A stretch of DNA of 64,000 bases from Oikopleura dioica. Its lineage: Eukaryota > Animalia > Chordata. A program made the position numbers and the translations under genes. The DNA lies in the NCBI GenBank assembly GCA_907165135.1, contig OU015566.1:124001-188000 (forward strand), read 5' to 3'. Below the pieces are notes generated by a model. That model was not told the origin of the DNA. It did no database searches and worked only from the letters and a program-made list of their open reading frames with translations. Position 1 is the stretch's first letter. Each line of letters starts with the position of its first letter. Shown here piece by piece: positions 41 through 54,183 of this stretch.

Positions 41-1086
41 TAATATCGATCAATGCAAGAACAGAAAAAATAAAAATTGAATATTCCTTTCACGGCCGAC
101 TTTCGTCAATTTGGATTGATTTTTGTAGGAATTCACAGATTAATTGCTGCTGTTTATTTCGCCTTGAACCCTTAACTAAGTGGGTAATTGATGAAAATTA
201 ATTTAAGTTAACTCTAGTTAATTAAGGGTTCAGGGATTAATTTTCAGTAGTGGTTCGGGAGTTTAGGTTTCTTTTGCGCTACGGTGCTTTCACAATTTCA
301 ATTGCATGAAAAAGGATGATAGTTAAAACGCATTAAAATCACAATATCGATTTCTTTTATCTTTAGAAAAATTACTCTTCCTTGATTTCAGTTTTATTTT
401 AAAATTACTGGTAATTATTTACTGCAACGATTCTCGCTGGAATTCTTCTTGATGGCAATTGCTGTATGTTCTCATCCACTAGCTGAGTTCCGCATTGCGG
501 CTTGACACTGTGACCCCGTGCACCTCGGGATGGCGGTGTCTGTAAGTGCTCCTGGTAGGCGACGGTTTTATGAATCCTTTTTCGGCTCGAATTTAGATCG
601 ACTGGTCATCCTTCTTCTTTAACGACGAAAATGCACTTTCTTCAACCTCGACGGCAACTGCTTCAACGACAAAAACGACAAAACCGACAAATACAAGATG
701 GAAATGGACAAACGCTCTGGACAGACGACGATTATGGAACTGGACTGGCTTGCGAATCTTTATCAAAGTGTGATATGGTCACATAGTGAGAAGTTGATCA
801 CTTTGATAAAATTGGAATGGAATTGCTGCTAATTATGAAAAATCGGATGAACTTGAATGGCGGAAGCGAAAGCGGCTTGCCATATTTGGAAAGAAAAACA
901 ACTGCGCGAAAGGCGCTTCACCATATTTGGAAGTAAAAACATCTGCGCGAAATGCGAAATTTGAAAATTTGTAAAATCGAAAATCAGTCTCTTTCTTCAA
1001 CCAAATAATATAGCAGCATTCCGAATTTTCTAGTGTTTTCTTTCGCAAGTGGCAATTAGCTTAGAGATAAGGACCAGACGGTATCA
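41..1086 (+). repeat. 5' LTR of element A
   Basis: Direct repeat of 6887-7932; termini TAATA...TATCA. Confidence 0.95.
481..590 (+). ncRNA. Conserved structured RNA motif in LTR (family A; second copy 7327-7436)
   Basis: Helices GAGT/GCTC, CCGC/GCGG, GACACTG/CGGTGTC and CCCG/CGGG covary with the other LTR families; function unknown. Confidence 0.65.
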
Positions 1087-1100
1087 TAGTGACCATGCCA
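1087..1100 (+). promoter_or_regulatory. Putative primer-binding site, atypical (TAGTGACCATG)
   Basis: Directly follows the 5' LTR; resembles TGGTGACC-type PBS but starts TAG, not TGG. Confidence 0.5.
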
Positions 1101-5200: not shown

Positions 5201-6797
5201 ATTGCGAGCGAAGTGTAATTATGAGAACTGGGATTTATGTCTGCAGGAAGTCCTTCATGATATAAATAACTCTTCTCATTCTGTGACAGGCCTTTCGCCC
5301 TTTACAATTCAAACAGGTTTTAGAAACCCCCATCACATTTTTGATCAAAACTTTCGAGATTATAACGAAAGAGTAGAAATAAATTTTGAGTCCATAAAAG
5401 ATCTAATTGACGAGGAAAAAAAAGCAAGACTGGCTAAATTCGCTAATCCATCATTCACCCCGTATAAAATTGGAGAAAAAGTTCTTTTACGAAATTTCGA
5501 AAATAAAAAACCATCATTTTTGGGACCATTTGAGATTATTTCTGCTTCAAAAGAAGGAACATGGTACACTGTAAAATCAGACAAACAGTTATTTAGGCGT
5601 CACGCTGATGACCTTAAGAAATTTCATTCTCGATTAGATAACCCTAGAATAAATCAAGCCCCGGAACCGGAAATTCCTGAAATTGAAAAAATTTTGCCAG
5701 ATCCCATTTTTAACGATCAGCCCCCAACCTTTTCTTATTTTTCTGCATCATCGCCCCTGGAAACCGATTCATTTGAAGTCAAAAAAGACATGGCCCTTGA
5801 TAAACTTTCATCGGCTTGTGTCGATGGGATTTTCGAAAATATTTTTACTCAATTTATAGTCGATGCGCTTTCAGAAAATTTAGAGGAGAGCGCTTCATCC
5901 TCAGAAGATGAAAGTTCTATTATTTCTGTTATCGAAAACGAGGGCGAATTTGAGATTTTGGAACGAGAAGAAATTAATAATTTAAGCGGTATATTGCCAA
6001 ATCCAGTTAGGCAACTAGAATTTTCTACCGATTCAGAGTTCGAAATTGAAACAAACAGTGAGTTATGGGAAATAACCATCGATTCGGACCCTGAAACGGT
6101 AGAAAAAAGTCCTAAATTACTATCTTATGATAAACTACAATTGACGCAAAATGATCGGCTTGTCACTCCAAAAGACTCTGATATTGACCCAATAAGAAAA
6201 CTTGCCAAAAGAGAGCGGGAATCTTCAAAAGACTCTGCCCCAAGCCCAAAAAAAGCAAATACAAATCTGGAATCAAATTTTTTTGAAATCGAAAACATGT
6301 CGATAGTTATAAAATTGGAAAATGAAAATATGGGATTTTTTGAAAAACTGGATCGGGAATATGAGGCCTTTGCTGCAGACATGATGGTCGAAAATGGTTG
6401 TATTTTAAGGCTGAGTGAGCTTGCGAAAGATAATCTTATGTTTATTTTATGGAAATTTGAAATTGAATTTTCGGAAACAGAAAATGTAGGAGAGTTAAGA
6501 CTAAAAATTCGAGACTATATTCAATCAAATCATCCAAATTGGCGAAAAACAAATTCAGGAGACCTTCTCTTTTTTTCAATCTTGCATTTGAGAGAACGGA
6601 AGCGCCTCTCTGAATTAAACAAACCCGAGTTAAAAGTTTTGATAGCTCAATTTAATCTGTCTGAAAAGTGTATTCCTTCAAAACTGTCAAAAAATGAATT
6701 ATTACGATTTATTGATGAAAAATTTCGTCTTCTTTTCCCAAATCATCCACGAGAAAATGATGAGCTTATTTTTGAACCAAAAACAAATATTCAATAG
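2160..6797 (+). CDS. pol: Pol polyprotein PR-RT-RNaseH-IN plus ~400 aa C-terminal extension
   Basis: VDTG protease, YMDD RT, LETDAS RNase H, HHCC finger, D-D-E (FDLI, LDNA, CENFN), GPF motif, then acidic linker and two helical repeats. Confidence 0.97.
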   Translation: MPRKICKRRSQQLKKLEREPDSDQIWVPQISVNNVGQQFFVNVNIFNSHVRCLVDTGAQINIICHKYIPKNIKIEKTKINVVNYSGGKIDIIGKVVAEIVIDEKINGKSTFYVVTNDFCPIFGVPALIDNELLINLKRKRLIKIGPVERFARLNEVTVNSSVSDNQEVQIYLEDEPYNALSKETFSFRPKSETIIDLHVQNLASTKNLFFEHSNLGDSKLQLIPSFQTVDSDSPIFRCLVINPTDSNIKIHAGTIYVKLEEVVEIARIKKTRNKNLDNLEVGPIESHSVKSKFDALTDEFSFLFLDNDDPLPACNLEKFSIKTESKHPIAVAPYRTPFSLRNEMWTMLKRDMKNDIIERCSSPWNSPCLLVRKKDGTYRLVIDFRQLNNVTYQQHHPLPNLEDSLSYLEKSRIFSSLDLIKGFYQVLIEEDSKDKTAFSCEFGQFRFKRMPMGAKNSPSHFMRIMDKVLMGTEKTQILAYMDDLLCHSVTEEDHLLCLRKFFTICSANNLRIHSRKALFFQKTVTFCGYVISSGNVYPSRDKIKAIENLTIPKSKEQAQSLFGLLNFHRRFINNFAAIALPITKTYRKNFCWTDEASDALNTLKKLICDNSLKLKIAPSDGGLFVLETDASNYGYGGVLYICEQNNNQESHFHNSDCLLPVMYNSGNFNQSQVNYTIIEKELLSAKLCMEKWSVYLACREFHWITDNNNIKYIKTLRTCNQKLARWITDLQSFSFRVISKSSSKMKVSDYLSRHSVSNLTINAIKLNENRFLELQKLDSTLSEIRKFLKIDRWPNNPKNDIAFYLLLRDKLEISESGLLVYKESHNISRVCVPRELEAEIIENYHNYCHAGIDQIFAKISLKYIWPRMKIGIREFIRSCSYCQKDKPNYHPNRAPTLSFKTPTGPYQVFGFDLITLRPTDKGNRYVMVMVDFFSKFGYCEPLKSRNSHELLSKFKNVIFRNPFFPKYVVLDNAREHSEIERFMIENSIEPHFSPPRHPQSNGQCENFNRTLKSRLRAKCNYENWDLCLQEVLHDINNSSHSVTGLSPFTIQTGFRNPHHIFDQNFRDYNERVEINFESIKDLIDEEKKARLAKFANPSFTPYKIGEKVLLRNFENKKPSFLGPFEIISASKEGTWYTVKSDKQLFRRHADDLKKFHSRLDNPRINQAPEPEIPEIEKILPDPIFNDQPPTFSYFSASSPLETDSFEVKKDMALDKLSSACVDGIFENIFTQFIVDALSENLEESASSSEDESSIISVIENEGEFEILEREEINNLSGILPNPVRQLEFSTDSEFEIETNSELWEITIDSDPETVEKSPKLLSYDKLQLTQNDRLVTPKDSDIDPIRKLAKRERESSKDSAPSPKKANTNLESNFFEIENMSIVIKLENENMGFFEKLDREYEAFAADMMVENGCILRLSELAKDNLMFILWKFEIEFSETENVGELRLKIRDYIQSNHPNWRKTNSGDLLFFSILHLRERKRLSELNKPELKVLIAQFNLSEKCIPSKLSKNELLRFIDEKFRLLFPNHPRENDELIFEPKTNIQ
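2199..2260 (+). promoter_or_regulatory. -1 ribosomal frameshift signal
   Basis: A_AAA_AAC heptamer just before the gag stop; stem GAGCCCGA/TTGGGTTC with possible TCTGA/TCAGA pseudoknot; pol is in the -1 frame. Confidence 0.8.
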
Positions 6798-6886
6798 TTC
6801 TTGAATAATCGATAAAAACAGAAGAAAAAAAAAAAAAATATATAAAAAACAAAGAATCAAAAAAAAAATCCCTGGCGGGGCCATAC

Positions 6887-7932
6887 TAATATCGATCAAT
6901 GCAAGAACAGAAAAAATAAAAATTGAATATTCCTTTCACGGCCGACTTTCGTCAATTTGGATTGATTTTTGTAGGAATTCACAGATTAATTGCTGCTGTT
7001 TATTTCGCCTTGAACCCTTAACTAAGTGGGTAATTGATGAAAATTAATTTAAGTTAACTCTAGTTAATTAAGGGTTCAGGGATTAATTTTCAGTAGTGGT
7101 TCGGGAGTTTAGGTTTCTTTTGCGCTACGGTGCTTTCACAATTTCAATTGCATGAAAAAGGATGATAGTTAAAACGCATTAAAATCACAATATCGATTTC
7201 TTTTATCTTTAGAAAAATTACTCTTCCTTGATTTCAGTTTTATTTTAAAATTACTGGTAATTATTTACTGCAACGATTCTCGCTGGAATTCTTCTTGATG
7301 GCAATTGCTGTATGTTCTCATCCACTAGCTGAGTTCCGCATTGCGGCTTGACACTGTGACCCCGTGCACCTCGGGATGGCGGTGTCTGTAAGTGCTCCTG
7401 GTAGGCGACGGTTTTATGAATCCTTTTTCGGCTCGAATTTAGATCGACTGGTCATCCTTCTTCTTTAACGACGAAAATGCACTTTCTTCAACCTCGACGG
7501 CAACTGCTTCAACGACAAAAACGACAAAACCGACAAATACAAGATGGAAATGGACAAACGCTCTGGACAGACGACGATTATGGAACTGGACTGGCTTGCG
7601 AATCTTTATCAAAGTGTGATATGGTCACATAGTGAGAAGTTGATCACTTTGATAAAATTGGAATGGAATTGCTGCTAATTATGAAAAATCGGATGAACTT
7701 GAATGGCGGAAGCGAAAGCGGCTTGCCATATTTGGAAAGAAAAACAACTGCGCGAAAGGCGCTTCACCATATTTGGAAGTAAAAACATCTGCGCGAAATG
7801 CGAAATTTGAAAATTTGTAAAATCGAAAATCAGTCTCTTTCTTCAACCAAATAATATAGCAGCATTCCGAATTTTCTAGTGTTTTCTTTCGCAAGTGGCA
7901 ATTAGCTTAGAGATAAGGACCAGACGGTATCA
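6887..7932 (+). repeat. 3' LTR of element A
   Basis: Copy of 41-1086 at offset 6846. Confidence 0.95.
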
Positions 7933-8275
7933 ATGACCATCGAAAAAAAAATTTTTTTTTTGAATTTTTTTTCTTTTGGGTTTGAGAGGCTCAGTATCAA
8001 CCAAAATGACGCTCGGAAGACGGCAGAAACGCTGCAAATAAAATTAGAGCAAAAAACGAAATTTCAAAATTTTGACCTCGTTTTTGGGCGATTCATGACA
8101 ACGATGACCATCGAAAAAAAAATATTTTTTTTTTGAATATTTTTTCTGTTGGGTTTGAGAGGCTCAGAATCAACCAAAATGACGCTCGGAAGACGGCAGA
8201 AACGCTGCAAATAAAATTAGGGCAAAAAACGAAATTTCAAAATTTTGACCTCGTTTTTGGGCGATTCATGATAAC

Positions 8276-9569
8276 TGATACGGAAGCGGCTGTCCTGCAG
8301 GAATTTTGCTCGATCTCTTACTCTAGAATGCCAAGCGAAAATAACGAGAATCAAATTTTAAATTTGCGTGGTTTTATTTGTGATTTGAATGACGGAGAAA
8401 GGCGCGACGCGGGGTTAAATAGCAGCGAGATTCGATCAGTGTTTTTGAACAAGCGGTTGTTTTTGAAAAACAATTTTTCTTTCGAAAACAAGGAAGAGAG
8501 CCCGTGGCTTCTTTTAGCGGTTTTCTTGCGGGAAATCCTTTCGGATCGATTTCTTTTCGGAAGAGGAGCTGGTCGAACTTGCCAAGCAAGTTATTTTCAA
8601 AGGTTTCGGGAGCCGGCGCCGCGCGTGACGAGATAAAACGCAAATTAATTATTTTTTTTTATAATAAAAAGCAGAAAATAATAACAGCCACTTAAACTTC
8701 TCACTATGTGACCGTAGAAGTGACTGTTAATTATGATTGAAATAAATAAAGGATGAGAAAAGTAAAAGAATATATACAAAATTTTAACAAATAAATTGAA
8801 TAAAATTTGGTCAGGATTTTATAAAATAAATTTATCAAAATTGAAATCATAGAAGAAGCAAATTCCAAAGAACATACCCGGGGGAAGTTACTGTCGCGGT
8901 TCGCACCGTATCTTCTCTTACGGATGAGCTAGTTTGCGACAAGCGGACGCACTGACAGAGAGTTTGTCCGACCCCACGGCACCGAGATGATACGACGGTT
9001 TATCTGCTCGTTGGAGTTGTTGTTGTTGAAGAAGGTGTTGACGGCTGTTCTGTTGTAGACTTTGAATCGTATGTACTGTCAATAATCGAACTTTAAAATC
9101 GCAAAGCAATGATAAGAAATATCAATAAATAGATTAAACATGCGGTTTTGCGAATTGCATATTTTTGATGAATTGACGTCAGATCGCACTAGAATAGTCA
9201 GAAACGAATTAAGATTTCTTCCAAAGTATGCGTACATACACATTAATCCTAGACTGAATAAACCCTTAATTAGTTTCCGACCCGTTGATTATGATGAGAG
9301 CATATGAGCATTCCAATGATAAAAGTAGAAATCGTAAAGAGATGACATGATGATAAGACAATTTTGGGTCAATCTGGCTCGTAAAAACTGACCATCTTTT
9401 CATTTTGAGAAGAATATCGTGAAATGATTTTTGAAAAAATGTCTGATCAATTTGGTGATACCAAGCTGACAAGACAAATTTAAACCAACGTAGAACCGAA
9501 TTGACGTAAATACTTGGCCGTGAAATAAATTTTTTGTGTTGCTTGAGGCGTTGTTCCCTAAGGATATCA
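8276..9569 (-). mobile_element. Solo LTR B (1294 bp)
   Basis: TGATA...TATCA termini, TSD ATAAC (8271-8275, 9570-9574); shares LTR motifs with element A on the minus strand. Confidence 0.92.
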
Positions 9570-11150
9570 ATAACGATGGCCATCGAAAAAAAAATTTTTT
9601 TTTGAATTTTTTTTCTGTTGGGTTTGAGAGGCTCAGTATCAACCAAAATGACGCTCCGAAGACGGCAGAAACGCTGCAAATAAAATTTGGGCAAAAACGA
9701 AATTTCAAAATTTTTACCTCGTTTTTGGGCGATTCATGATAACGATGACCATCGAAAAAAAAATTTTTTTTTTCTGTTGGGTTTGAGAGGCTCAGAATCA
9801 ACCAAAATGACGCTCGGAAGACGGCAGAAACGCTGCAAATAAAATTAGGGCAAAAAACGAAATTTCAAAATTTTAACCTCGTTTTTGGGCGATTCATGAT
9901 AACGATGGCCATCGAAAAAAAAATTTTTTTTTTTGAGTTTTTTTTCTGTTGGGTTTGAGAGGCTCAAGATCAACCAAAATGACGCTCGGAAGACGGCAGA
10001 AACGCTGCAAATAAAATTAGAGCAAATAACGAAATTTCAAAATTTTGACCTCGTTTTTGGACGATTCATGATAACGATGACCATCGAAAAAAAAATTTTT
10101 TTTTTTGAATTTTTTTTCTGCTGGGTTTGAGAGGCTCAGAATCAACCAAAATGACGCTCGGAAGACGGCAGAAACGCTGCAAATAAAATTAGGGCAAAAA
10201 ACGAAATTTCAAAATTTTAACCTCGTTTTTGGGCGATTCATGATAACGATGGCCATCGAAAAAAAAATTTTTTTTTTTGAATTTTTTTTCTGTTGGGTTT
10301 GAGAGGCTCAGAATCAACCAAAATGACGCTCGGAAGACGGCAGAAACGCTGCAAATAAAATAAGGGCAAAAAACGAAATTTCAAAATTTTGACCTCGTTT
10401 TTGGGCGATTCATGATAACGATGACCATCGAAAAAAAAATTTTTTTTTTTGAATTTTTTTTCTGTTGGGTTTGAGAGGCTCAGAATCAACCAAAATGACG
10501 CTCGGAAGACGGCAGAAACGCTGCAAATAAAATTAGGGCAAAAAACGAAATTTCAAAATTTTGACCTCGTTTTTGGGCGATTCATGATAACGATGACCAT
10601 CGAAAAAAAAATTTTTTTTTTTGAATTTTTTTTCTTTTGGGTTTGAGAGGCTCAAGATCAACCAAAATGACGCTCGGAAGACGGCAGAAACGCTGCAAAT
10701 AAAATTAGAGCAAATAACGAAATTTCAAAATTTTGACCTCGTTTTTGGGCGATTCATGATAACGATGACCATCGAAAAAAAAATTTTTTTTTTTGAATAT
10801 TTTTTCTGTTGGGTTTGAGAGGCTCAGAATCGACCAAAATGACGCTTGGAAGACGGCAGAAACGCTGCAAATAAAATTAGGGCAAAGAACGAAATTTCAA
10901 AATTTTGACCTCGTTTTTGGGCGATTCATGATAACGATGACCATCGAAAAAAAAATTTTTTTTTTGAATTTTTTTTCTGTTGGGTTTGAGAGGCTCAGTA
11001 TCAACCAAAATGACGCTCGGAAGACGGCAGAAACGCTGCAAATAAAATTTGGGCAAAAAACGAAATTTCAAAATTTTGACCTCGTTTTTGGGCGATTCAT
11101 GATAACGATGACCATCGACAAAAAATTTTTTTTTCGATGGCCATCGTTAT

Positions 11151-12424
11151 TGATATCCTTAGGGAACAACGCCTCAAGCAACACAAAAAATTTATTTCAC
11201 GGCCAAGTATTTACGTCAATTCGGTTCTACGTTGGTTTAAATTTGTCTTGTCAGCTTGGTATCACCAAATTGATCAGACATTTTTTCAAAAATCATTTCA
11301 CGATATTCTTCTCAAAATGAAAAGATGGTCAGTTTTTACGAGCCAGATTGACCCAAAATTGTCTTATCATCATGTCATCTCTTTACGATTTCTACTTTTA
11401 TCATTGGAATGCTCATATGCTCTCATCATAATCAACGGGTCGGAAACTAATTAAGGGTTTATTCAGTCTAGGATTAATGTGTATGTACGCATACTTTGGA
11501 AGAAATCTTAATTCGTTTCTGACTATTTTAGTGCGATCTGACGTCAATTCGCAAAACCGCATGTTTAATCTATTTATTGATATTTCTTATCATTGCTTTG
11601 CGATTTTAAAGTTCGATTATTGACAGTACATACGATTCAAGGTCTACAACAGAACAGCCGTCAACACCTTCTTCAACAACAACAACTCCAACGAGCAGAT
11701 AAACCGTCGTATCATCTCGGTGCCGTGAGGTCGGACAAACTCTCTGTCAGTGCGTCCGCTTGTCGCAAACTAGCTCATCCGTAAGAGAAGATACGGTGCG
11801 AACCGCGACAGTAACTTCCCCCGGGTATGTTCCTTGGAATTTGCTTCTTCTATGATTTCAATTTTGATAAATTTATTTTATAAAATCCTGACCAAATTTT
11901 ATTCAATTTATTTGTTAAAATTTTGTATATATTCTTTTACTTTTCTCATCCTTTATTTATTTCAATCATAATTAACAGTCACTTCTACGGTCACATAGTG
12001 AGAAGTTTAAGTGGCTGTTATTATTTTCTGCTTTTATTATAAAAAAATAATTAATTTGCGTTTTATCTCGTCACGCGCGGCGCCGGCTCCCGAAACCTTT
12101 GAAAATAACTTGCTTGGCAAGTTCGACCAGCTCCTCTTCCGAAAAGAAATCGATCCGAAAGGATTTCCCGCAAGAAAAACCGCTAAAAGAAGCCACGGGC
12201 TCTCTTCCTTGTTTTCGAAAGAAAAATTGTTTTTCAAAAACAACCGCTTGTTCAAAAACACTGATCGAAACTCGCTGCTATTTAACCCCGCGTCGCGCCT
12301 TTCTCCGTCATTCAAATCACAAATAAAACCACGCAAATTTAAAATTTGATTCTCGTTATTTTCGCTTGGCATTCTAGAGTAAGAGATCGAGCAAAATTCC
12401 TGCAGGACAGCCGCTTCCGTATCA
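11151..12424 (+). mobile_element. Solo LTR B' (inverted duplicate of B)
   Basis: Reverse complement of 8276-9569 with an 18-bp deletion and SNPs; TSD GTTAT on both sides; lies in an inverted satellite block (~11125-12890). Confidence 0.92.
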
Positions 12425-20187: not shown

Positions 20188-23100
20188 TGATGCCGATTAA
20201 CTGCAAATCTCTCTAAGCTAGAATTCCTGCTGAAGAATGAGGCCAAAATACGAAACGTGGCTGTATTATTTTTGGTTTGAAGAGAGTGATTTCCAAATTT
20301 CCAAATTTTCAATTTTGCATTTCGCGCAGGTGCTTTCATTTCCAAATAAGGCGCAGCGCATTTCGCGCCGCTGTTTTTCTTTCCAAATATGGTGAAGCGC
20401 TTTCGCGCATTTGTTTTTCTTCGTTGATTTCAATTTCGCTTCAACAGCCACGTTCGCTTCGAATTTTATCGCAAAAATTCAATTTTATCAATAAGTTCAA
20501 TTTCCAACTATGTTGCCATATCCCTTATCGATAAAAATCCTTTTCGTTAAAATGTTTACCAAAGCCAGTTCCATATTCGTTGTCAGTCCATTGCGTGATC
20601 GTTGTCGTTGAAGAAGAAGTCGCCGCCATTGTTGAAGCTGCAGTTTTGTCGGTTTTGAGGAGAATGGTCAGTTTCCCCTAAAGCGAGCCAAAAAGGTGTT
20701 CAATCAATTTTGCCTACCAGGAGCACTTACAGACAGCGCCATCCCGAGGAGCACGGGGTCACACTGTCAAGCCGCGCAAAGCGGAACTCAGCTAGAGGAT
20801 GAAAGTATCATGCAACAGCTTCGAAGTAGTTGAAGAAGAATACCAGTTGAATAGTCCAATTGTCGAGAAGATGTCGTCGTTTGAAATCATAGAAGAGTCA
20901 GCTTGATCCATCAAATAATATTTACCAGAGCAGAATATTGAAAAGAGATTGTGAGCACTAGAATTTTTTAACAAAAACCGTCGAAACGGGTGGCTAATGT
21001 GCCTTTTGTGAGTGTGAAATAACGCGTACGTTATGAAAAATAGAGATTTTATGAACTCATGCATTATCCGAGATTTGGCTCCAAAATCATCAGAACAATT
21101 TAACCGTGAATTTCATGCTCGATCAACCTAATTGGCGTAAAATAATTTGTGAGAGATAAATTCAATTTTAATTTTTATTTGTCTTAGTTCTTTCCCGTAT
21201 TCGTATCAGTATGACCCGTCATGGGTTTCTTTTTTTGGTGGAGCATCTTTTTGGGCAAGAACAAATTGAATTTTAGATATCAGGTCCGAATATTAGTTCA
21301 TTGTTTTTTTTCGGATGATTCGGATATAATTTTTCAAAAGCAGTTGTGATAAATAATATCATTTCCGATTTGTTTTGCAGACTACATTTAGGCAAGTTAT
21401 ACTCAGCCATAAGAACTTTGAGCTCAGACTTTGTCAGATCAAAAAGAGTTTTTTCCTTTTTCAAATTTAATATTGAAAAGAATAATAATTCGCCGCATGC
21501 ATTTTTACGCCAATTAGGGTGATTTTTCCAAACATACTCTCTGATTTTAATTCTTAGATCTGAAATTGTTTCTGTCGTCAAGAAATCGACCTCAAACTTA
21601 TGCAAGATATATCTTAAGGCTTCTTTTGTAAGTTCTCCCAACTTCAAGATGCACCCGTTTTCTATAACCATATCCTCCCTGATTTCCTCAACTCTCGCTT
21701 CAATTCTCTCGAAAAAATCTTGATGCTCATTTTGAAATTTAAATGCTATTGAAATATTAAAATTTGGCTCACAATCCATCTCCGAACAATTTTGAGGCTC
21801 CTCGCTAGCTATTTTATCGGCTTCTAAATTTGGAATTTTAGAGCAAGGAACAGAATCCGCGGATGATTCCCTATCACGTTTCCGATTCGCTGAAATGTCT
21901 AATTTATCATAAGAGATAAGCGGTTCTTGATTATCAGTTAAAAAATTTTCGTGAACTGTTTCTGTTTCTACTGTCGAAAAGTCCTCATCAAGAGTTATTT
22001 CCCAATGCGAATTTGTATCAATTTCCCACTCAGAATCCGAGGAATTCACAGATCCTACAAATGGAAAATCATCTGGTTTAGGAATAGCGTCGAAAATTAC
22101 CGAGTTTTCAGGCTCAGTGTTAATATGCTCATTTTCAATTATTGATACACAAGAGCTTTCTTCAGACGAAGATTCCATAGATTCCAGTGTATCAATAATC
22201 CAATCTGTGCAAATATTATCAAAGACTTGTTCAACAAGTAAATCAACTATTTTGTCATATCTTTTTTCGATTTCTTTCTCTTCCGATGAAATCGGCGAAC
22301 TAATACAGAACCCATTCGAGAAAGACTCAGGCTCACAAAAAATATTTTTTTTTGGATCAGAAAAACTGCTTTGAACTTCGGGGAAAATAACAGGGGCCTC
22401 AAAATCTTGCAATTCTTCCTTCCTGACATTAAATTTTCTCAAATGATCTGCATGTCGTCTATATTCTTTGTTTTCAGACTCGACCGTATACCACGTTCCC
22501 TCTTTTGATTTACTTTTAATCTTGTACGGACCCAGAAAAGCGGGTTTCTTTGCATCAAAATTTTTAATAAGAACAAAATCATCAATTTGGTAAGGGGAGA
22601 ATTTTGAATTTGAAAATTTTTCTAGCCGCTTTTGCTTTTCTTCATCGATTAAAATTTTGATATCTTCGAAATTAATGTCAATTTTTTGATACGGGGCCCT
22701 AAAATTTGGATCAAAAATATCGTGAGTGTTTTTTACACCCATTTGAAGCGAATAAGGGGAAGTTTTAGTCACTGAATGTTCAGATGTATTTAGATCGTGA
22801 ACGATTTCTTGAAGAAAGCAGTCCCAGTTAACAAAATTACAGCGAGCACGAAGCCTACTTTTGAGAGTTCTATTGAAATTTTCGACTTGCCCATTTGAGG
22901 ACGGATGTCTTGGGGGTGTAAAATGGGGTTCAATCTTGCTTTCTTTCATGAATTTTTCAAGTTCAGAATGTTTGCGTGCATTGTCAAGAACAACAATTTT
23001 GGGAAAAACTGGGTTTTTAAAAATTACACTTTTAAATTTTTCAAGAAAATTTTTTGAATTTCGTGATTCCAAGGGCTCACAATAGCCGAATTTTGAGAAA

Positions 23101-23310
23101 AAATCAATCATGACCATAACGTACTTATTCCCAAAATCAGTTGGAGGGAGTGTAATAAGGTCGAATCCAAAAACTTCGAATGGTCCGTCCGGTGTTTTAA
23201 AAGTCAGAATCGGTGCTCTATTGGGGTGAAAATTCGGCTTGTCTTTTTGACAAAAAGAACATGTTCTAACAAACTCTTTTATTGCATTCCGCATTCTAGG
23301 CCAGATATAT
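20188..23310 (-). mobile_element. Element D: 3' half (integrase, extension, 3' LTR 20188-21208) of a split LTR retrotransposon
   Basis: LTR ~99% identical to 50066-51086; flank ACGAT; pol homology to element A begins abruptly at YIWPRM (~23310). Confidence 0.92.
21273..23310 (-). pseudogene. pol: 5'-truncated pol: integrase core and C-terminal extension
   Basis: CSFC half of the zinc finger, FDLI/LDNA/VENFN catalytic motifs, GPY motif, tandem helical repeats; still an open frame. Confidence 0.9.
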
Positions 23311-26373: not shown

Positions 26374-27444
26374 TGGAAAGAACACAAAAAAAATAAAAAT
26401 TGAATTCCTTTCTTTCACGGCCCGTTTCGTCAACTTGGATAGATTTTTGAATGAATACACACAAAACCGGTTAAACATGGATTCTTGAGCCAATTCCGTG
26501 GATTGCTTGCATGAGATCATCACAATCAAAAATACTGTTATTTGTTATAACGTACGCGATATTCACATCATCAAAGGCACATTAGCCAGCGTCATTTGGC
26601 GTTTAACTCTCACAAATTTTAGGAAAGCATGAACATTCAAACGAACCAATTATTTTCTTATATTTTTCTGAAAATTATTATTCTGGTAAATATTATTTCT
26701 TCGACGATTCTGGATTCTCCTCCTTGATTTCACAATTCGACTAATTCTTCTGGAAACTCTCATCTACAATGGAAAGCTACTTTTTCTTCTTTGATTTCAG
26801 TTGGACTGCCGTATGTAGCTCATCCCCAGCCGAGTTCCGCTTAGCGGCTTGACACTGTGACCCCGTGCACCGCGGGATGGCGGTGTCTGTAAGTGCTCCT
26901 GGTAGGTTTTGTTGTTAGAATCCCTTTTTGGCTCGATTTAAGGACGACTGGTCATCTTCTTCAAAAACGACAAAATTGCACTTTCTTCAACAAAAACGAC
27001 AGCTTCAACTACAACGACAACGACTATGCCTGGACTGACAACGATTTGGACAATGGATTTGGTTAAACTTTATTTTTATTTCTTATCAGCAGTGATATGG
27101 CCACATAGTGGGAAGTTAATCTGTTGATAAGAAAGAAGAATTAAAACATATTTCAACATGGAAACTGCTGCTAGCGTCACGTGATTGCGACTGTGTGAAA
27201 AACAAAACGAGGACAACAATTGTGCGAAAAGCGCTTCGCCATATTTGGAAATGAAAATAAGCGCGCGAAATGCGCGAGCGCCTTATTTGGAAATAATTGC
27301 ATCTGCGCGAAATTGAAATTGAAAATTTTGAAATTTGAAAATCACTTCTCTTCTTACCAAATATAATAGCAGCGTTTCCGAATTTCAAGAGTTTTTCCTT
27401 CGCAAGTTGCAGTTAGCTTAGAGAATTCATTCGAAATTGTATCA
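26374..27444 (+). mobile_element. LTR F (solo or orphan 3' LTR of a related family)
   Basis: Shares 5' A-tract, RNA motif, CACATAGTG box and GCGCGAAA/CArG repeats with LTR A; ends GTATCA; no PBS follows; flanks TATAC/CACAC. Confidence 0.85.
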
Positions 27445-30748: not shown

Positions 30749-31941
30749 CTTCGAGAATTTACCTTGTCCGTTTGTAGTCGCCATGATATCGAAAGCAAAT
30801 GTCCTAAGAATGTCTCTCAACTGCTAGAATGCAAATCACATGCGATAAAATAGAAACTCAATTTTTAATTAAAACGATGTGGCGGTGGATGTATTTGTGG
30901 AAAGAATGATTTTTCGAAAGCAGAAATTTTTGAAATTTCATATGCAGATGTTTTTCAATAACAATAACATTTCCATAAAAGGAAAATTTCGCGTCCTCGT
31001 TGTTTTTCATTCGCAGCGCGCATTTCGCGCGATTGTTTTTCTTTTCCAAATGCTCCAAATAATCGCACCAAACACCACCAAATCGCTTCTTTTCTTATCA
31101 CTGCAATTCAAGATTCTCACTATGTGACCTCAAGAATTGACAGTAATTTCCAGTTTTAGTCCAGATCCAAATTCGTCGTCGTTTCCAAAGCAAGTTTCGT
31201 TGTCCAGGTGGTAGTTGTTGTAGTTGTTGTCATCACCGTCGTCCCAAATGGCCGTTGTGTAATTGTTGTCGTTTTGAGGTGGTCAGCTAGAAAAGAACAG
31301 CAACCGTAACAAGCTCAAAAGATTCGATTACCTAGAGGCGCTTATTTCCGCGGTTGACCGTTTTGGCATTTTCTGGCCCGGGCACTTTGCGGAAAGCCGG
31401 ACATAACCCACCAATTTCATGTCCGGAAGCCTAGCTAGTAAGAGCAATAATTCCAGTGAAGACATAGAAGAGAACCAAGTTGTCGGCGTCGTAGAAGCAA
31501 AATCCGTCGATTATTAATTTTTCTATTTGTACTGTCAATAATTATGAACAAAAATAGTAATTATTTAAATAGAGCTTTGTCATCCTTTTTCATGCAATAA
31601 GAAATAATGAAAGAAAACCGTCGAAACGGGCGGCTAATGTGCCTTAGTTGCGATGATGTGAACACACGCGTACGTGCCAAAATTACAAAATAAACAGATG
31701 TTTATTTTCCCCCAATTAGTTTTGTTTTGTCTATAATCCCTAATTAACTAATCTTAATTAAAATTAACGGATCTTACCCACTTAGTTAGGAATTATAGAC
31801 GTGAAATGAAGAAACTTTTCGGTTTTACTCTGATCGATTTTTGATTTTTTTTTTGTGTGATTTCTAACTGGCGAAGACCGTGACTCTGAATTATCAATAA
31901 ATCATTTTTTTTGTGTTCCCTTTTCTTATCATTATCAGTTT

Positions 31942-49900: not shown

Positions 49901-50065
49901 GAATCGCCCAAAAACGAGGTCAAAATTTTGAAACTTCGTTTTTGCCCTAATTATATTTGCATTAATTCTGCTGTTCTCCGAGCGTGCTTTTGGTTGATTC
50001 AGAGCCTTTCAAAACCAACAGAAAAAAAATTCAAATAAAAAAAAATTTTTTTCGATGGTCATCGT
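31942..50065 (-). repeat. Satellite array, subfamily 2, reverse orientation, ~108 monomers with higher-order repeats
   Basis: Continuous ~168 bp monomers; diagnostic variants recur at ~1.35 kb and ~3.4-4.0 kb periods. Confidence 0.96.
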
Positions 50066-51124
50066 TGATACGAATACGGGAAAGAACTAAGACAAAAAAA
50101 TTAAAATTGAATTTATCTCTCACAAATTATTTTACGCCAATTAGGTTGATCGAGCATGAAATTCACGGTTAAATTGTTCTGATGATTTTGGAGCCAAATC
50201 TCGGATAATGCATGAGTTCATAAAATCTCTATTTTTCCTTCATAACGTACGCGTTATTTCACACTCACAAAGGCACATTAGCCACCCGTTTCGACGGTTT
50301 TTGTTAAAAAATTCTAGTGCTCACAATCTCTTTCCAATATTCTGCTCTGGTAAATATTATTTGATGGATCAAGCTGACTCTTCTATGATTTCAAACGACG
50401 ACATCTTCTCGACAATTGGACTATTCAACTGGTATTCTTCTTCAACTACTTCGAAGCTGTTGCATGATACTTTCATCCTCTAGCTGAGTTCCGCTTTGCG
50501 CGGCTTGACAGTGTGACCCCGTGCTCCTCGGGATGGCGCTGTCTGTAAGTGCTCCTGGTAGGCAAAATTGATTGAACACCTTTTTGGCTCGCTTTAGGGA
50601 AACTGACCATTCTCCTCAAAACCGACAAAACTGCAGCTTCAACAATGGCGGCGACTTCTTCTCCAACGACAACGATCACGCAATGGACTGACAACGAATA
50701 TGGAACTGGCTTTGGTAAACATTTTAACGAAAAGGATTTTTATCGATAAGGGATATGGCAACATAGTTGGAAATTGAACTTATTGATAAAATTGAATTTT
50801 TGCGATAAAATTCGAAGCGAACGTGGCTGTTGAAGCGAAATTGAAATCAACGAAGAAAAACAAATGCGCGAAAGCGCTTCACCATATTTGGAAAGAAAAA
50901 CAGCGGCGCGAAATGCGCTGCGCCTTATTTGGAAATGAAAGCACCTGCGCGAAATGCAAAATTGAAAATTTGAAAATTTGGAAATCACTCTCTTCAAACC
51001 AAAAATAATACAGCCACGTTTCGTATTTTGGCCTCATTCTTCAGCAGGAATTCTAGCTTAGAGAGATTTGCAGTTAATCGGCATCATGGTGCCCACGCCG
51101 GAAGCCAACTTCAAGGTGAATAAA

Positions 51125-52156
51125 ATGCCCGAAGAATTACTTTTCGCTTCATTTCCCTCCCTCAATTCTCGTCAATTTTTTCGGCCGAATATGCTTTCTT
51201 ATGAATTTTTGATTTCTAAAAATAATTTGAGCGACAAAATTAAAGCGATGGAAAAAATTTTCGATAAAAGTATAAAAGATCATAATCGAGAGTCTGATCG
51301 AGAAAATTTGGAAAAAGCTTTTGCTCGACAAGTTGTTGATTGCATTCGCAATAATTGCTCGCATGAATTCGTGAATAATTACGGGCGAGAGATGGCCAAT
51401 TTTGAAAACATGAAGGAAACTTTTGAATTTTTGGAATCGGTTTTTGGAACAGAGTCAGAGGAAGAAAAGCGAGAGCGGGCGGGGATCGAACTTGAAAATC
51501 TTTGCCGTAGATCGGAAATGAATGAAAAGTTCTCCTCATTTTTGACACGAATAAAGTCAGTCGCGGAAATTATCTCTGATAAGCCAGATGCGGTTGCGTT
51601 TATCGTCAACGCTCATTTTTTGAAAAATCTGGAACCGGCGAATAAATCATTTTTGCGTGATCACGGGTTCGGTAAGAAAAGTGCTCAGGAAATTGCGACC
51701 TTTTTGGATTCTCGAGAGAGATATTTAAGTGTCAATGTTTCTTCGATTGAGTCTGCTAATCTGGCATCCTTTGTTGATCGAACGAGTGACCTTTTGGATT
51801 CGAAATTGACTCAGATGGAGACAAATTATGAACGCAAGAATGCCGAATTATTAGAACAGATCAAACAGCTTACGGCGACAGTAGCTAAAATTGAACTCGA
51901 AAAAAAGGCCAAAAATCAGGATATGAGCAGACCTGCAAACCCGCCTGCCTCAGCAAATTTTATCCCCCCGTTTCCGTTTCCGAGATTTCAACAACCGCCC
52001 CAAGCGGCCCCTTTTTGCCAAAATTGCCAACAATGGGGTCATGTCAAACCGAGGTGCCCCAAGATTAAGTGTTATGAGTGTCAGGGTTTTGGTCATATTG
52101 GCAGATACTGCTTGAAAAGACGGGAGAATAACAGCCAAGATCAGGCAAAAAACTAG
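51125..52156 (+). CDS. gag: Gag of element E
   Basis: MPEELLF start, two CCHC knuckles, A_AAA_AAC before the stop. Confidence 0.93.
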   Translation: MPEELLFASFPSLNSRQFFRPNMLSYEFLISKNNLSDKIKAMEKIFDKSIKDHNRESDRENLEKAFARQVVDCIRNNCSHEFVNNYGREMANFENMKETFEFLESVFGTESEEEKRERAGIELENLCRRSEMNEKFSSFLTRIKSVAEIISDKPDAVAFIVNAHFLKNLEPANKSFLRDHGFGKKSAQEIATFLDSRERYLSVNVSSIESANLASFVDRTSDLLDSKLTQMETNYERKNAELLEQIKQLTATVAKIELEKKAKNQDMSRPANPPASANFIPPFPFPRFQQPPQAAPFCQNCQQWGHVKPRCPKIKCYECQGFGHIGRYCLKRRENNSQDQAKN

Positions 52157-54183
52157 ATTTTGGAGCGAATTCTGGTCAAATAACCGTTCCAAAAATCTCA
52201 ATTAACAAAATTGGAGAGCAATTTTATGTAAATGTAAATATTTTTAACTCACCTGTTCGATTTTTGTTAGATACCGGTTCACAATTAAATTGTATTTGTA
52301 AGAAAAATGTACCAAAAAACATAAAAATTCAAAAAACAAAAACTGAAGCAGTTAATTATTCCGGCGGACATATTGAGATTTTGGGGAAAGTCGAAGCGGA
52401 TATAATTATCGAAAATGTTAATTGGGGCAAATCAGAGTTTTATGTCGTTCCCGATAATCTTAGCCCTATTTTGGGTGTTCCTGCTATACAAGATAATGAA
52501 ATAATGATTAATCTACATCGCCGTAGAATTATTCAATCTGGACCGATAGAGCGTTTTGCGAAATTAAATCAAGTTGTTGCGGAAGACACTGTCGAGGACA
52601 ATGATGATAAGAAAAATAGCAGTGAATATGATGCATTCTCGACGGAAACTTTTTTATTTAGGCCAAAATCAGAATTCATTATTGATTTAAAAATAGACAA
52701 TCTTGACCGCTCAAAAAGTCTCTCATTCGATCAATCTAATCTTGGAAATTCAAAATTGCAGCTTATTCCTAGCTTTCAGGTTGTCGATAAAAATTCCCCA
52801 AAGTTTCGTCTTCTTGTTGTTAATCCGACAGATACAGTAATAAGAATCCCCGCGGGTACGATTTTTGTTAAATTGCACGAAATTGTCGAGATTGCAAGAA
52901 TCAAAAATATAAAGCATAAAAACTTGAAAAATATTTCCGTCGGAAGGATTAACTCTCCAAAAATAAAAATGAATTTTGACGCCCTTCTTGATGATTTTGT
53001 TCACCTTTTTTTGGATGATGATGATGAACTCCCCGAATGTACGATTGAAAAATTTTCAATAGACACAGATACAGAATTCCCAATCTCATCAGCTCCATAT
53101 CGCACCGCTTTTAGCTTACGAAATGTTCTTCGAGATCTTTTAGACAAATTTATGGGTAATAAATTGATAGAACGATGCACAAGCCCATGGAATAGTCCAT
53201 GTATTTTGGTCAGAAAAAAGAATGGGCAATTCCGTCTCGTTATCGATTTTAGAAAATTGAACGATGAAACAGTACAGATACATCATCCACTGCCAAATTT
53301 AGAGGATTCTTTGTCTTACTTAGATAAAAGCACTATTTTTTCTTCGATAGATTTGATTAAGGGTTTCCACCAGATCGCTCTCTCAGAGGAGGCAAAAGAT
53401 AAAACCGCATTCTCAAACGAATTTGGACAATTTAGATTTTTGCGAATGCCGATGGGCTGTCGAAATGCTCCAAGTTTTTTCATGAGAGTTATTGATCAGG
53501 CCCTTAGAGGCGTAGAAAAATCTGAGATTTTACCGTACATGGATGATATTCTTATTCATAGTAAAACAGAAGAACAGCATTTCTTAAATATCAAAAAGTT
53601 TTTTCACATTCTAGACGCAAATAATTTAAGAATAAATTCACGTAAAGCTTCATTTTTTACGAGATCAGTGACATTTTGCGGCTATTTTATTTCGGATGGC
53701 AATATTTCTCCTTCAACTGATAAAATTCAAGCAATAAAAAATTTACAAATTCCATGCTCCAAAGAAAGTGCACAAAGCCTTTTTGGGCTTTTGAATTTTC
53801 ATAGGCGTTTTATTAAAAATTTTGCGGCTATCGCATTACCTATAACAAAAACTTGGAGAAATGGGTTTTTATGGACGAATGATGCTACTGAAGCCTTTAA
53901 AAAGCTTCAGAGTATTATTTGTGATAATGCGATGAAACTTAAAATAACCCCTGTAGAAGACGCACTGTTTGTTCTTGAAACAGATGCGTCAAATAATGCC
54001 TATGGTGGTGTCCTGTATATCTGTGAGAAAAATTGTAGGGAGGAGTCTCATCATCATTCGAGCGAGTGCTTGATTCCTGTGGGCTATAATAGTGGTAATT
54101 TTAATGAAACTCAGTCAAGATACACAATTATCGAAAAAGAGTTATTTTCAGCAAAACAATGCATGATGAAATGGGCTATATAT
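52147..54183 (+). pseudogene. pol: 3'-truncated pol (PR, RT, most of RNase H)
   Basis: LDTG, YMDD and LETDAS motifs; strongly similar to element A pol. Confidence 0.92.

What the first reader, a model, noticed from the sequence alone, without database searches (positions are those of the whole stretch)
481..590. Unassigned, strongly covarying RNA structure conserved in the LTRs of five divergent retrotransposon families (ribozyme candidate)
Seen: the same architecture occurs at 481-590, 7327-7436 (A), ~8857-8980 minus and ~11721-11845 (B), 20685-20793 minus and 50482-50590 (D/E), 26828-26935 (F) and 31312-31436 minus (G), although most of the surrounding LTR sequence has diverged. Layout: P1, then U, P2 hairpin, invariant CUU, P3 with internal loop and apical hairpin, RUAAS, P1', short linker, GGUA, variable region, GAA, U-tract. 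Helices swap sequence but keep pairing. P1: GAGU/GCUC (A,E,F), AGGC/GCCU (G), GGGG/CCCC (B). P2: CCGC/GCGG, CCGGAC/GUCCGG, CGGAC/GUCCG. P3: GACAC/GUGUC, GACAG/CUGUC, UCCGC/GCGGA, GUCGC/GCGAC. Linker bases stay fixed. Established: paired covariation with fixed unpaired bases marks functional RNAs, and self-cleaving ribozymes occur in R2 (HDV-like) and retrozyme/Penelope (hammerhead) elements. By eye it fits no hammerhead, HDV, twister, pistol, hatchet or hairpin consensus. Inference: a new ribozyme class that could release element RNA from read-through satellite transcripts, or a stability, export or packaging element.
Basis: partly seen in the sequence, partly recalled or inferred. Interest (0 to 1): 0.92.

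Follow-up and report, generated by a model that had tools for sequence, protein, structure and literature searches.

The report
Folded RNA module in Tor LTRs
The long terminal repeats of the Tor jumping genes of the tunicate Oikopleura dioica carry a real, previously undescribed folded RNA element that sits just before a splice-site-like signal; it is probably a control element of the element's own RNA, not a self-cutting ribozyme.

Summary
All eight listed copies exist and fold into the same junction (P1 closing hairpins P2 and P3). The window is Oikopleura dioica, and the elements are Tor (Ty3/gypsy) retrotransposons inserted in a 170-bp satellite. The five families reduce to three independent sequence versions (A/D/E/F, B, G).

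I found the same module in at least 68 LTR copies genome-wide and in eight Tor relatives from marine metagenomes. Across 14 variants, 172 of 174 helix cells pair and 11 of 13 pairs change on both sides. There are 11 G-U pairs against one A-C, so this is a sense-strand RNA structure. No Rfam family matches.

The ribozyme idea is poorly supported.

What stays invariant is G|GUR, 2-4 nt after P1'. In 10 of 12 lineages a 3' splice-site-like pentamer ends 37-45 nt further on (background 8%); the host's intron size peaks at 47 nt.

Best reading: a non-catalytic cis element coupled to a splice donor and mini-intron inside the LTR. RNA reads gave no coverage, so transcript ends and splicing remain untested. 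First readers noted the same motif twice on other pieces of this genome.

The parts
41..1086 (+). 5' LTR of Tor element A (1046 nt); the module lies at LTR positions 445-511
   Evidence: Direct repeat 39-1096 = 6885-7940. The LTR end TATCA is followed by the PBS-like TAGTGACC at 1087. gag and pol carry Ty3/gypsy domains.
6887..7932 (+). 3' LTR of element A
485..551 (+). Junction core, A copy. P1 is GAGU/GCUC, P2 is CCGC/GCGG, J23 is CUU, P3 is GACACUGU/GCGGUGUC with an apical CCCG/CGGG, and J31 is UGUAAGU.
7331..7397 (+). Identical core in the 3' LTR of A
26832..26898 (+). Core, F copy (A-type sequence)
50486..50554 (+). Core, E copy (A-type). The fifth P3 pair is flipped from C-G to G-C.
20721..20789 (-). 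Core, D copy (same element as E, on the opposite strand)
8881..8975 (-). Core, B1. P1 is GGGG/CCCC, P2 is CGGAC/GUCCG, P3 is GUCGC/GCGAC. The MFE fold is exactly the three-way junction.
11727..11821 (+). Core, B2 (P1 is GAGG/CCCC with one A-C mismatch)
31336..31432 (-). Core, G. P1 is AGGC/GCCU, P2 is CCGGACAUGA/UUAUGUCCGG, P3 is UCCGC/GCGGA. The MFE fold is the three-way junction.
554..596 (+). 5' splice-site-like G|GUAGGC (G554, GU 555-556) and a 42-nt intron-like segment ending UUUAG at 596. The same unit occurs at 7400-7442, 26901-26942, 50557-50597, 20678-20718(-) and 31287-31332(-).
8815..8878 (-). In B: G|GUAUGU followed by a U-rich stretch with no AG before the box. In the full B LTR (L060) the first AG is 155 nt downstream.
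602..608 (+). Conserved box CUGGUCA. It reads CUGACCA in E, B and G: 50603-50609, 8808-8814(-), 31280-31286(-).
472..477 (+). Upstream UCAUCC box. It is conserved only in A-type and B copies (UCAUCU in B).

Best explanation
The module is a non-catalytic, cis-acting RNA domain of the sense transcript of Tor LTR retrotransposons. A closing helix P1 encloses the long hairpin P3 and, in most lineages, a second hairpin P2. It ends 2-4 nt before a conserved 5' splice-site-like G|GUR. In most lineages a 37-45-nt unit follows that has the size and ends of a typical O. dioica mini-intron.

I propose that the folded domain sets how accessible this donor is to U1 snRNP, and possibly also binds Gag. The transcript pool would then be divided into unspliced RNA, which keeps the intact LTR sequence and can serve as the genome, and processed RNA used only for expression. 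This is the job done by the splice-donor/packaging domain of retroviral leaders.

Shown: the structure, its strand, its restriction to Tor LTRs, the invariance of G|GUR, and the intron-like spacing.

Inferred: U1 binding, actual splicing, any link to packaging, and whether the module sits in a long R/5'UTR or in U3/3'UTR.
For: Structure:
- Across 14 non-redundant variants, 172 of 174 anchored helix cells pair and 11 of 13 pairs show double-sided changes. None of 2000 column shuffles reaches the observed values.
- RNAalifold predicts P2 and P3 on its own for the A-type set, with 6 compensatory pairs.
- On a structure-blind MAFFT alignment of 8 B/G-type sequences, P3 is 100% paired, against 22-42% when the partner is slid by 1-3 columns.

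Strand:
- There are 11 G-U pairs against 1 A-C pair, which points to the gag-pol sense strand as RNA.

Specificity:
- At least 68 strong A-type hits occur genome-wide, typically in pairs about 6.8 kb apart.
- The module is present in metagenomic Tor relatives whose Pol is 51-68% identical to that of A (49, 50, 58, 61, 79).

Donor:
- G|GUR is invariant in all 14 variants, while the 2-4-nt linker before it varies.

Intron-like unit:
- A T-rich pentamer ending in AG lies 37-45 nt after the GU in 10 of 12 lineages, or 6 of 7 independent groups. The background rate in the same LTRs is 7.9%, giving a binomial P of about 1.6e-6.
- O. dioica introns peak at 47 bp (PMC4122922).

Need for such signals inside the LTR:
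- gag starts at the LTR-end/PBS junction, so there is no leader between the PBS and gag.

Modularity:
- In L210 the A-type junction is missing from its homologous site, and a P2-less version followed by GGUG sits about 90 nt downstream. The module therefore looks modular and required.
Against: - There is no RNA evidence. Four public RNA runs of the species label gave essentially no reads on this LTR. Splicing, the transcription start and the poly(A) site are therefore unknown.
- B, the most abundant family, and L075 have no AG at the expected distance.
- The 36-46-nt search range and the 3' splice-site definition were chosen after I had seen the data.
- No genomic copy of A or B shows the predicted spliced junction.
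- A TATA-Inr-AAUAAA-like arrangement 100-150 nt before the LTR end in B, L208 and L076 suggests that transcription may start downstream of the module. That would place it in U3, and so only in the 3' UTR, where a splice donor has a less obvious purpose.
- Henriet et al. mapped Tor3a splice donors near the start of gag, not in the LTR.
- P1 is only 4 bp, and its register was chosen among a few alternatives.
Confidence: 0.4

Rival explanations
1. The module lies in U3 and acts only in the 3' UTR of the genomic RNA, without splicing. There it would be an export, stability, cyclisation or packaging element. Transcription would start about 100 nt before the LTR end.
For: - TATA-like boxes lie 30 nt upstream of a TCATT-type initiator and just before an AAUAAA-like hexamer, near the LTR end, in B (L060 about 2071-2120), L208 and the distant L076.
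- The LTR between the module and its end carries further conserved hairpins, for example GGUCACAUAGUGAGAA, which is identical in A, B and G.
- With no leader after the PBS, the roughly 1-kb U3 is the only large non-coding stretch.
Against: - It does not explain the invariant G|GUR or the intron-like spacing.
- The promoter reading rests on consensus matching by eye in three lineages. L074, L079 and L072 lack a clear TATA box at -30.
Confidence: 0.2
2. The junction is the R region itself, in the manner of the TAR and poly(A) hairpins of HIV-1. Transcription would start at or near UCAUCC. The A-rich J31 hexamer would serve as the poly(A) signal presented by the fold. Cleavage would occur near GGUR, and the U-rich stretch would be the downstream element. 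The structure would aid minus-strand transfer.
For: - J31 reads AAUAAG, UAUAAG or AUUAAG in several lineages, 11-15 nt before GGUR, and a U/GU-rich stretch follows.
- UCAUCC lies about 7 nt before P1 in A-type and B copies, and resembles the first bases of the host SL RNA gene.
Against: - The J31 hexamers are poor or absent poly(A) signals in many lineages (UGUAAG, AGUAAC, CAUAGC, CAAAGC, UAGAAC).
- UCAUCC is absent from the G-type lineages.
- This reading would require a U5 of 540-700 nt.
- It offers no reason for an invariant GGUR at a cleavage site.
Confidence: 0.12
3. It is a new class of self-cleaving ribozyme that frees element RNA from read-through satellite transcripts.
For: - The fold is a compact multi-helix structure with covariation and has no Rfam match.
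- The elements sit in transcribable satellite arrays.
- As far as I recall, ribozymes are known in R2, Penelope-like elements and retrozymes.
Against: - Junction bases are not conserved between lineages. J12 is U, UU or absent. J23 is CUU, CUG or GUU. J31 has many forms.
- P2 is dispensable (L208, L210).
- No candidate cleavage site or pseudoknot covaries.
- The elements have an LTR promoter of their own.
Confidence: 0.03
4. It is a DNA-level element such as an enhancer, promoter or cruciform, or shared ancestry with no RNA function.
For: - The A-type sequence is almost invariant over 131 nt, loops included. That is more conservation than pairing alone requires.
Against: - Helix sequences are completely replaced while pairing is kept.
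- G-U pairs outnumber A-C pairs 11 to 1. Protein-binding DNA sites do not behave in this way.
Confidence: 0.05

Closest known systems
Splice-donor / packaging domain of retroviral 5' leaders, such as the HIV-1 SD hairpin and the three-way-junction core encapsidation signal (PMC4974535 and PMC7395439, seen as titles and abstracts; details from my own knowledge)
   Same: It is a multi-helix junction in the non-coding part of a retroelement RNA, placed right at a 5' splice-site sequence. Only the unspliced form can propagate.
   Different: - It lies inside the LTR, not between the PBS and gag.
- It shows no sequence or Rfam relation to those domains.
- Neither splicing nor Gag binding has been shown.
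- The putative intron is a 37-45-nt mini-intron, not the large gag-pol intron.
Splice donors located in the R region of the LTR (HTLV/BLV, foamy viruses; my own knowledge, not checked here)
   Same: A 5' splice site lies inside the LTR and is therefore present at both ends of the provirus. In foamy viruses U1 binding and RNA structure are reported to decide poly(A) site use.
   Different: - It is not known whether the Tor module lies in R.
- The fold is different.
- Those donors splice to distant acceptors.
Hammerhead ribozymes of Penelope-like elements and retrozymes; HDV-like ribozymes of R2 and other non-LTR elements
   Same: A structured RNA within the terminal repeats of a retroelement. 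The hammerhead is also a three-way junction.
   Different: - There is no CUGANGA, GAAA or UH core.
- The junction strands are 1-2, 3 and 5-9 nt long and vary in sequence.
- There is no nested pseudoknot.
- cmscan gives no hit even at E<=10.
O. dioica spliced-leader RNA
   Same: A 5' exon is followed by G|GUR. In F-type copies the bases upstream of P1 share CUCAUCCC...GAGU..CCG with the start of the SL.
   Different: - The similarity is limited to about 15 scattered bases and occurs only in some A-type copies.
- The 'exon' would be about 90 nt, against 40 for the SL.
- The upstream promoter regions are unrelated.
- The Sm-like U-tract is not conserved across lineages.
Ty3 bipartite primer-binding site, where U3 sequences pair with the primer tRNA (my own knowledge)
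   Same: Tor has a very short PBS. It matches 8-12 nt of the 3' end of tRNA-Arg(UCG). PBS-like or anti-PBS-like boxes lie in the LTR downstream of the module.
   Different: The module itself shows no consistent complementarity to the tRNA. The longest matches are no better than in shuffles.

Membership tests
Hammerhead ribozyme | Three-way junction with conserved CUGANGA and GAAA strands and a UH cleavage site | tested here: not met
   The junction strands are U/UU, CUU/CUG/GUU and an A-rich 5-9-mer on the sense strand, and their complements do not fit either. There is no Rfam hit at E<=10 on either strand.
HDV-like, twister, twister-sister, pistol, hatchet and hairpin ribozymes | Match to the family covariance model (nested pseudoknots and conserved cores) | tested here: not met
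   cmscan against Rfam 15 gave nothing at gathering threshold over the whole window. At E<=10 over the A, B and G copies it gave only weak snoRNA noise.
Any self-cleaving ribozyme | Site-specific self-cleavage of the transcript | not testable with these tools
   No RNA ends could be mapped, because the RNA runs gave no coverage.
Functional structured RNA (generic) | Base pairs kept through compensatory changes beyond what relatedness explains | tested here: met
   172 of 174 cells are paired and 11 of 13 pairs have double-sided changes, with 0 of 2000 shuffles as high. P3 on a structure-blind alignment is 100% paired, against 22-42% when slid. RNAalifold finds 6 compensatory pairs. Caveat: the registers of P1 and of some P2 helices were chosen by looking for pairing.
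Spliceosomal GT-AG mini-intron of O. dioica | 5' G|GUR donor | tested here: met
   It is invariant in all 14 variants, and 10 of the 14 have A at -2.
Spliceosomal GT-AG mini-intron of O. dioica | Pyrimidine-rich YAG acceptor at a length near the species mode (47 nt) | tested here: inconclusive
   It is present 37-45 nt downstream in 10 of 12 lineages, against an 8% background (intron sizes from PMC4122922). It is absent in B and L075. The criterion was defined after seeing the data.
Spliceosomal GT-AG mini-intron of O. dioica | Spliced junction observed in RNA | tested here: inconclusive
   No reads covered the region in 4 RNA runs. No spliced-form copies of A or B exist in the genome.
Retroviral leader packaging / splice-donor domain | Lies in the 5' untranslated leader of the genomic RNA | not testable with these tools
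   The transcription start within the LTR is unknown. The paper that mapped Tor start sites gives no positions in its text.
Retroviral leader packaging / splice-donor domain | Specific binding by Gag/NC, and requirement for encapsidation | not tested
   Needs bench work.
Spliced-leader RNA | About 40-nt leader identical to the species SL, a donor site and an Sm site | tested here: not met
   The SL is found 49 times exactly elsewhere in the genome. The LTR shares only a short 5' word with it.

The most novel reading that the evidence does not exclude
The junction is the core of a new, very small self-cleaving ribozyme class. In a less radical form, it is a structure-gated splice donor with a mini-intron embedded in an LTR, whose retention marks the RNA that can replicate. 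My evidence disfavours the ribozyme but cannot exclude it without a cleavage assay. I put the second reading at about 0.3.
Probability: 0.04. Interest if true: 0.9.

Novelty: new member of a known kind. Interest (0 to 1): 0.55.

Why it matters
Tor elements are the main active LTR retrotransposons of a model chordate with an extremely compact genome, and some carry env genes. Nothing in the papers I could search describes a cis-acting RNA signal in their LTRs.

These elements have no leader between the primer-binding site and gag. A conserved folded module next to a splice-donor-like signal therefore points to where their RNA-level control may sit: packaging, export, or the choice between genomic RNA and messenger RNA.

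If the mini-intron is real, the LTR contains an intron that must be retained for faithful replication. That would offer a simple, testable system for how a retroelement sorts its RNAs in a host that uses very short introns and trans-splicing. The motif is also a handy marker for finding Tor-like elements in marine metagenomes.

Tried and rejected
- **Rfam.** The whole window at gathering threshold and the A, B and G copies at E<=10 gave nothing relevant.
- **tRNA/tmRNA scan of the window.** None found.
- **Covariance model R1, built from A-type copies.** It finds all A-type copies but scores B and G no better than satellite noise. Sequence similarity between the types is therefore nil, and the link between them is architectural only.
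- **RNA evidence.** One run search and one read-laying run. Three oligo-dT RNA runs and one single-cell run of the same species label gave 0-4 partial reads, all on a different conserved 40-nt block. No verdict on expression, RNA ends or splicing.
- **Fetching more of the genome.** I used metagenome contigs carrying Tor Pol instead.
- **Metagenome pattern scan for the B/G-type P3.** The pattern was too loose and returned only bacterial noise. Two scans of viral contigs found nothing relevant.
- **Genomic copies of the predicted spliced junction of A and B.** None found.
- **ORF in the LTR downstream of the module.** The Asp/Asn-rich frames are not consistent between lineages, so this was rejected. 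It is an (AACGAC)n-like repeat.
- **Pseudoknot between the upstream UCAUCC and GGAUGG in P3.** It is not kept in L071, so rejected.
- **Long-range helix AGCUGAG/UUCGGCU seen in MFE folds.** It is broken without compensation in L012, so rejected.
- **Bipartite-PBS idea.** The module shows no consistent complementarity to tRNA-Arg(UCG).
- **SL-RNA origin.** Only a short shared word, so rejected.
- **J31 as a TATA box.** It resembles the TATAAG hairpin of the distant L076, but the distances to any initiator do not fit.

Full report
**What the window is**

The 40-nt O. dioica spliced leader occurs 49 times exactly in this assembly, so the genome is Oikopleura dioica. Earlier notes of this scan say the same. 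The window is a 170-172-bp satellite array carrying several LTR retrotransposons. Their gag and pol genes have zf-CCHC, RVP, RVT_1, RNase H, Integrase_H2C2 and rve domains in the Ty3/gypsy order. These are the Tor elements of Volff et al. 2004 and Henriet et al. 2015 (PMC4402516).

Element A has identical 1046-nt LTRs at 41-1086 and 6887-7932. The finding sits in the middle of the LTR, at LTR positions 445-511.

**Check of the observation**

All eight stated copies are there, and the quoted helix strands are correct. A pattern descriptor encoding the architecture finds 7 loci in the window, against a mean of 0.2 in 40 dinucleotide shuffles. This test is partly circular, because the descriptor came from these copies.

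A, D/E and F share one nearly invariant 131-nt sequence. B and G are unrelated to it in sequence: a covariance model built from A-type copies scores them within the noise. The window therefore offers three independent versions, not five. D and E are the two LTRs of one element, now on opposite strands 30 kb apart (I11).

**Independent data**

BLAST and the model find at least 68 A-type copies in the assembly, typically in pairs about 6.8 kb apart, as expected of LTRs. B has at least 40 near-identical copies and G has 6.

I therefore took Tor-like Pol proteins from public metagenomes, at 36-69% identity to the Pol of A, and fetched their contigs. The module is present in every lineage at 50-68% Pol identity whose LTR is covered:

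| Locus | P1 | P2 | J23 | P3 | Donor |
|---|---|---|---|---|---|
| L071 | as A | CCAC/GUGG | CUU | AUCAC/GUGAU | GGUA |
| L072/L073 | ACGU/GCGU | CCCUGC/GCAGGG | CUG | UCCGC/GCGGA | GGUG |
| L075 | UGCG/CGCG | 8 bp, one mismatch | CUU | UCCGC/GCGGA | GGUG |
| L074/L079 | GCCGC/GCGGC | CCUU/AAGG | CUG | AUCGC/GCGAU | GGUA |
| L209 | weak | CCAGUG/CACUGG | CUG | GUCGG/CCGAC | GGUG |
| L208, L210 | GAGU/GCUC | none | GUU | GUCGG/CCGAC | GGUG |

The distant 40% clade (L076) has a short LTR and a long leader, and I did not find the module there.

**Covariation**

I anchored the helices at the junction in 14 non-redundant variants.
- 172 of 174 cells pair.
- 11 of 13 pairs show changes on both sides.
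- No column shuffle out of 2000 reaches the observed values.

RNAalifold predicts P2 and P3 on its own for the A-type set, with six compensatory pairs. For P1 it prefers an alternative GAG/CUU pairing. I reject that alternative because it fails in the CUG lineages.

On a MAFFT alignment made without regard to structure, P3 is paired in 40 of 40 cells. This falls to 22-42% when the partner is slid by 1-3 columns.

There are 11 G-U pairs and 1 A-C pair, so the structure belongs to the sense strand as RNA. Thermodynamic z-scores are modest. P1 is short and its register was partly chosen, so P1 is the least secure helix.

**What is and is not conserved**

- J12 is U, UU or absent.
- J23 is CUU, CUG or GUU.
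- J31 ranges over UGUAAGU, AAUAAGC, UAUAAGC, CAUAGC, CAAAGC, AGUAACUU and UAGAACA.
- P2 can be absent.

That is not what a catalytic core looks like. Together with the lack of any Rfam match, it makes a ribozyme unlikely.

What never changes is G|GUR, 2-4 nt after P1'. It usually has A at -2 and often G at +5, which are the positions that define a 5' splice site.

In 10 of 12 lineages a T-rich pentamer ending in AG lies 37-45 nt after the GU. The background rate in the same LTRs is 7.9%. Counting 6 of 7 independent groups gives P of about 1.6e-6. O. dioica introns peak at 47 bp (PMC4122922). Within the A-type alignment both ends of this unit are conserved and its middle is free.

A box CUGACCA, or its complement CUGGUCA, follows within 0-10 nt.

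B and L075 lack the nearby AG. In B the next 155 nt contain no AG and end in a good acceptor-like UUAACAG.

**Where the module sits in the transcript**

This is unresolved.
There is thus no post-PBS leader, and RNA signals must lie in the LTR or in gag.
- Some lineages show a TATA-Inr-AAUAAA-like arrangement 100-150 nt before the LTR end. That would put the module in U3.
- The UCAUCC box just upstream of P1 in A-type and B copies resembles the first bases of the SL RNA gene, and might instead mark a start site.
- The only RNA runs offered gave no coverage.
- The paper that mapped Tor start sites gives no positions in its text, and no supplement is held.

**Conclusion**

The structure is real, new to the databases and papers I could search, and specific to Tor LTRs. 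The best-supported mechanism is a non-catalytic cis element coupled to a splice-donor-like signal and a probable mini-intron (confidence 0.4).

The rivals are a purely 3'-UTR element (0.2), an R-region/poly(A) module (0.12), a DNA-level element or no RNA function (0.05) and a ribozyme (0.03).

The copies were only compared.

Noticed in passing
window 777-792, 7623-7638, 11989-12004, 8698-8713(-), 31114-31129(-): A 16-nt block GGTCACATAGTGAGAA is identical in the otherwise unalignable LTRs of A, B and G, about 230-290 nt downstream of the module. It can form a 4-bp hairpin UCAC-AUA-GUGA. In L072 it reads UGAC-AUA-GUCA, which is compensatory. Its UGGUCAC matches the 3' end of the primer tRNA, so it is complementary to the PBS. 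The few RNA reads that mapped at all lay on this block.
   Followed up: partly
window 1087-1100; L072 923-945; G000:C1:2491947-2492019: The Tor primer-binding site is only 8-12 nt long (TGGTGACC...). It matches the 3' end of a tRNA-Arg(UCG) gene found in the genome. In most lineages the gag ATG is formed by the last LTR bases plus the PBS. In element A this ATG is mutated (ATA) and gag starts 48 nt further on.
   Followed up: partly
window 20188-23294(-) and 50000-54255(+): One Tor element is split. Its 5' LTR, gag and RT lie at about 50.0-54.3 kb on the + strand. Its integrase and 3' LTR lie at 23.3-20.2 kb on the - strand, and the LTR parts are 100% complementary. The satellite between them is also inverted. 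This is either a roughly 30-kb inversion or an assembly artefact.
   Followed up: no
window 8651-9605 and 11115-12051: Two B-family LTRs in inverted orientation (98-99% identical) flank about 1.5 kb of satellite. No internal region lies between them.
   Followed up: no
window 600-720 (and the same place in E, F, G, L071, L072, L074, L209): A tract rich in AACGAC-like repeats follows the module in nearly all lineages. It reads as Asp/Asn-rich in some frame, but no ORF is conserved between lineages.
   Followed up: partly
window 970-1015; L060 2071-2120; L208 about 100-160: Near the 3' end of the LTR, a TATA-like box lies 30 nt upstream of a TCATT-type initiator-like word and next to an AAUAAA-like hexamer. 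This may be the real core promoter and poly(A) signal, implying a short R.
   Followed up: partly
window 375-391: CTCTTCCTTGATTTCAG, a strong 3' splice-acceptor-like word, lies about 95 nt upstream of the module. It recurs upstream of the module in F, L071, L072 and L210. It could be an SL trans-splice acceptor.
   Followed up: no
L210 4700-4920: In this A-related element (Pol 68% identical) the A-type junction is missing from its homologous site. A P2-less B/G-like version followed by GGUG sits about 90 nt further downstream, so the module appears to have been replaced or moved.
   Followed up: partly
window 6871-6886; L072 6811-6828; L208 about 6000-6030: There is no purine tract before the 3' LTR. 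A conserved CCCTGG..GTGGTCA-like word lies there instead, and it resembles the 3' end of the primer tRNA (an anti-PBS). An earlier first-reader note of this scan says the same.
   Followed up: no
L074 and L079, about 700-900: Four to five tandem copies of a hairpin CUCGCC-N-GCGGUGCGAG lie in the LTR downstream of the module. A has a related GCGC-GAAAG-GCGC pair at 903-950.
   Followed up: no
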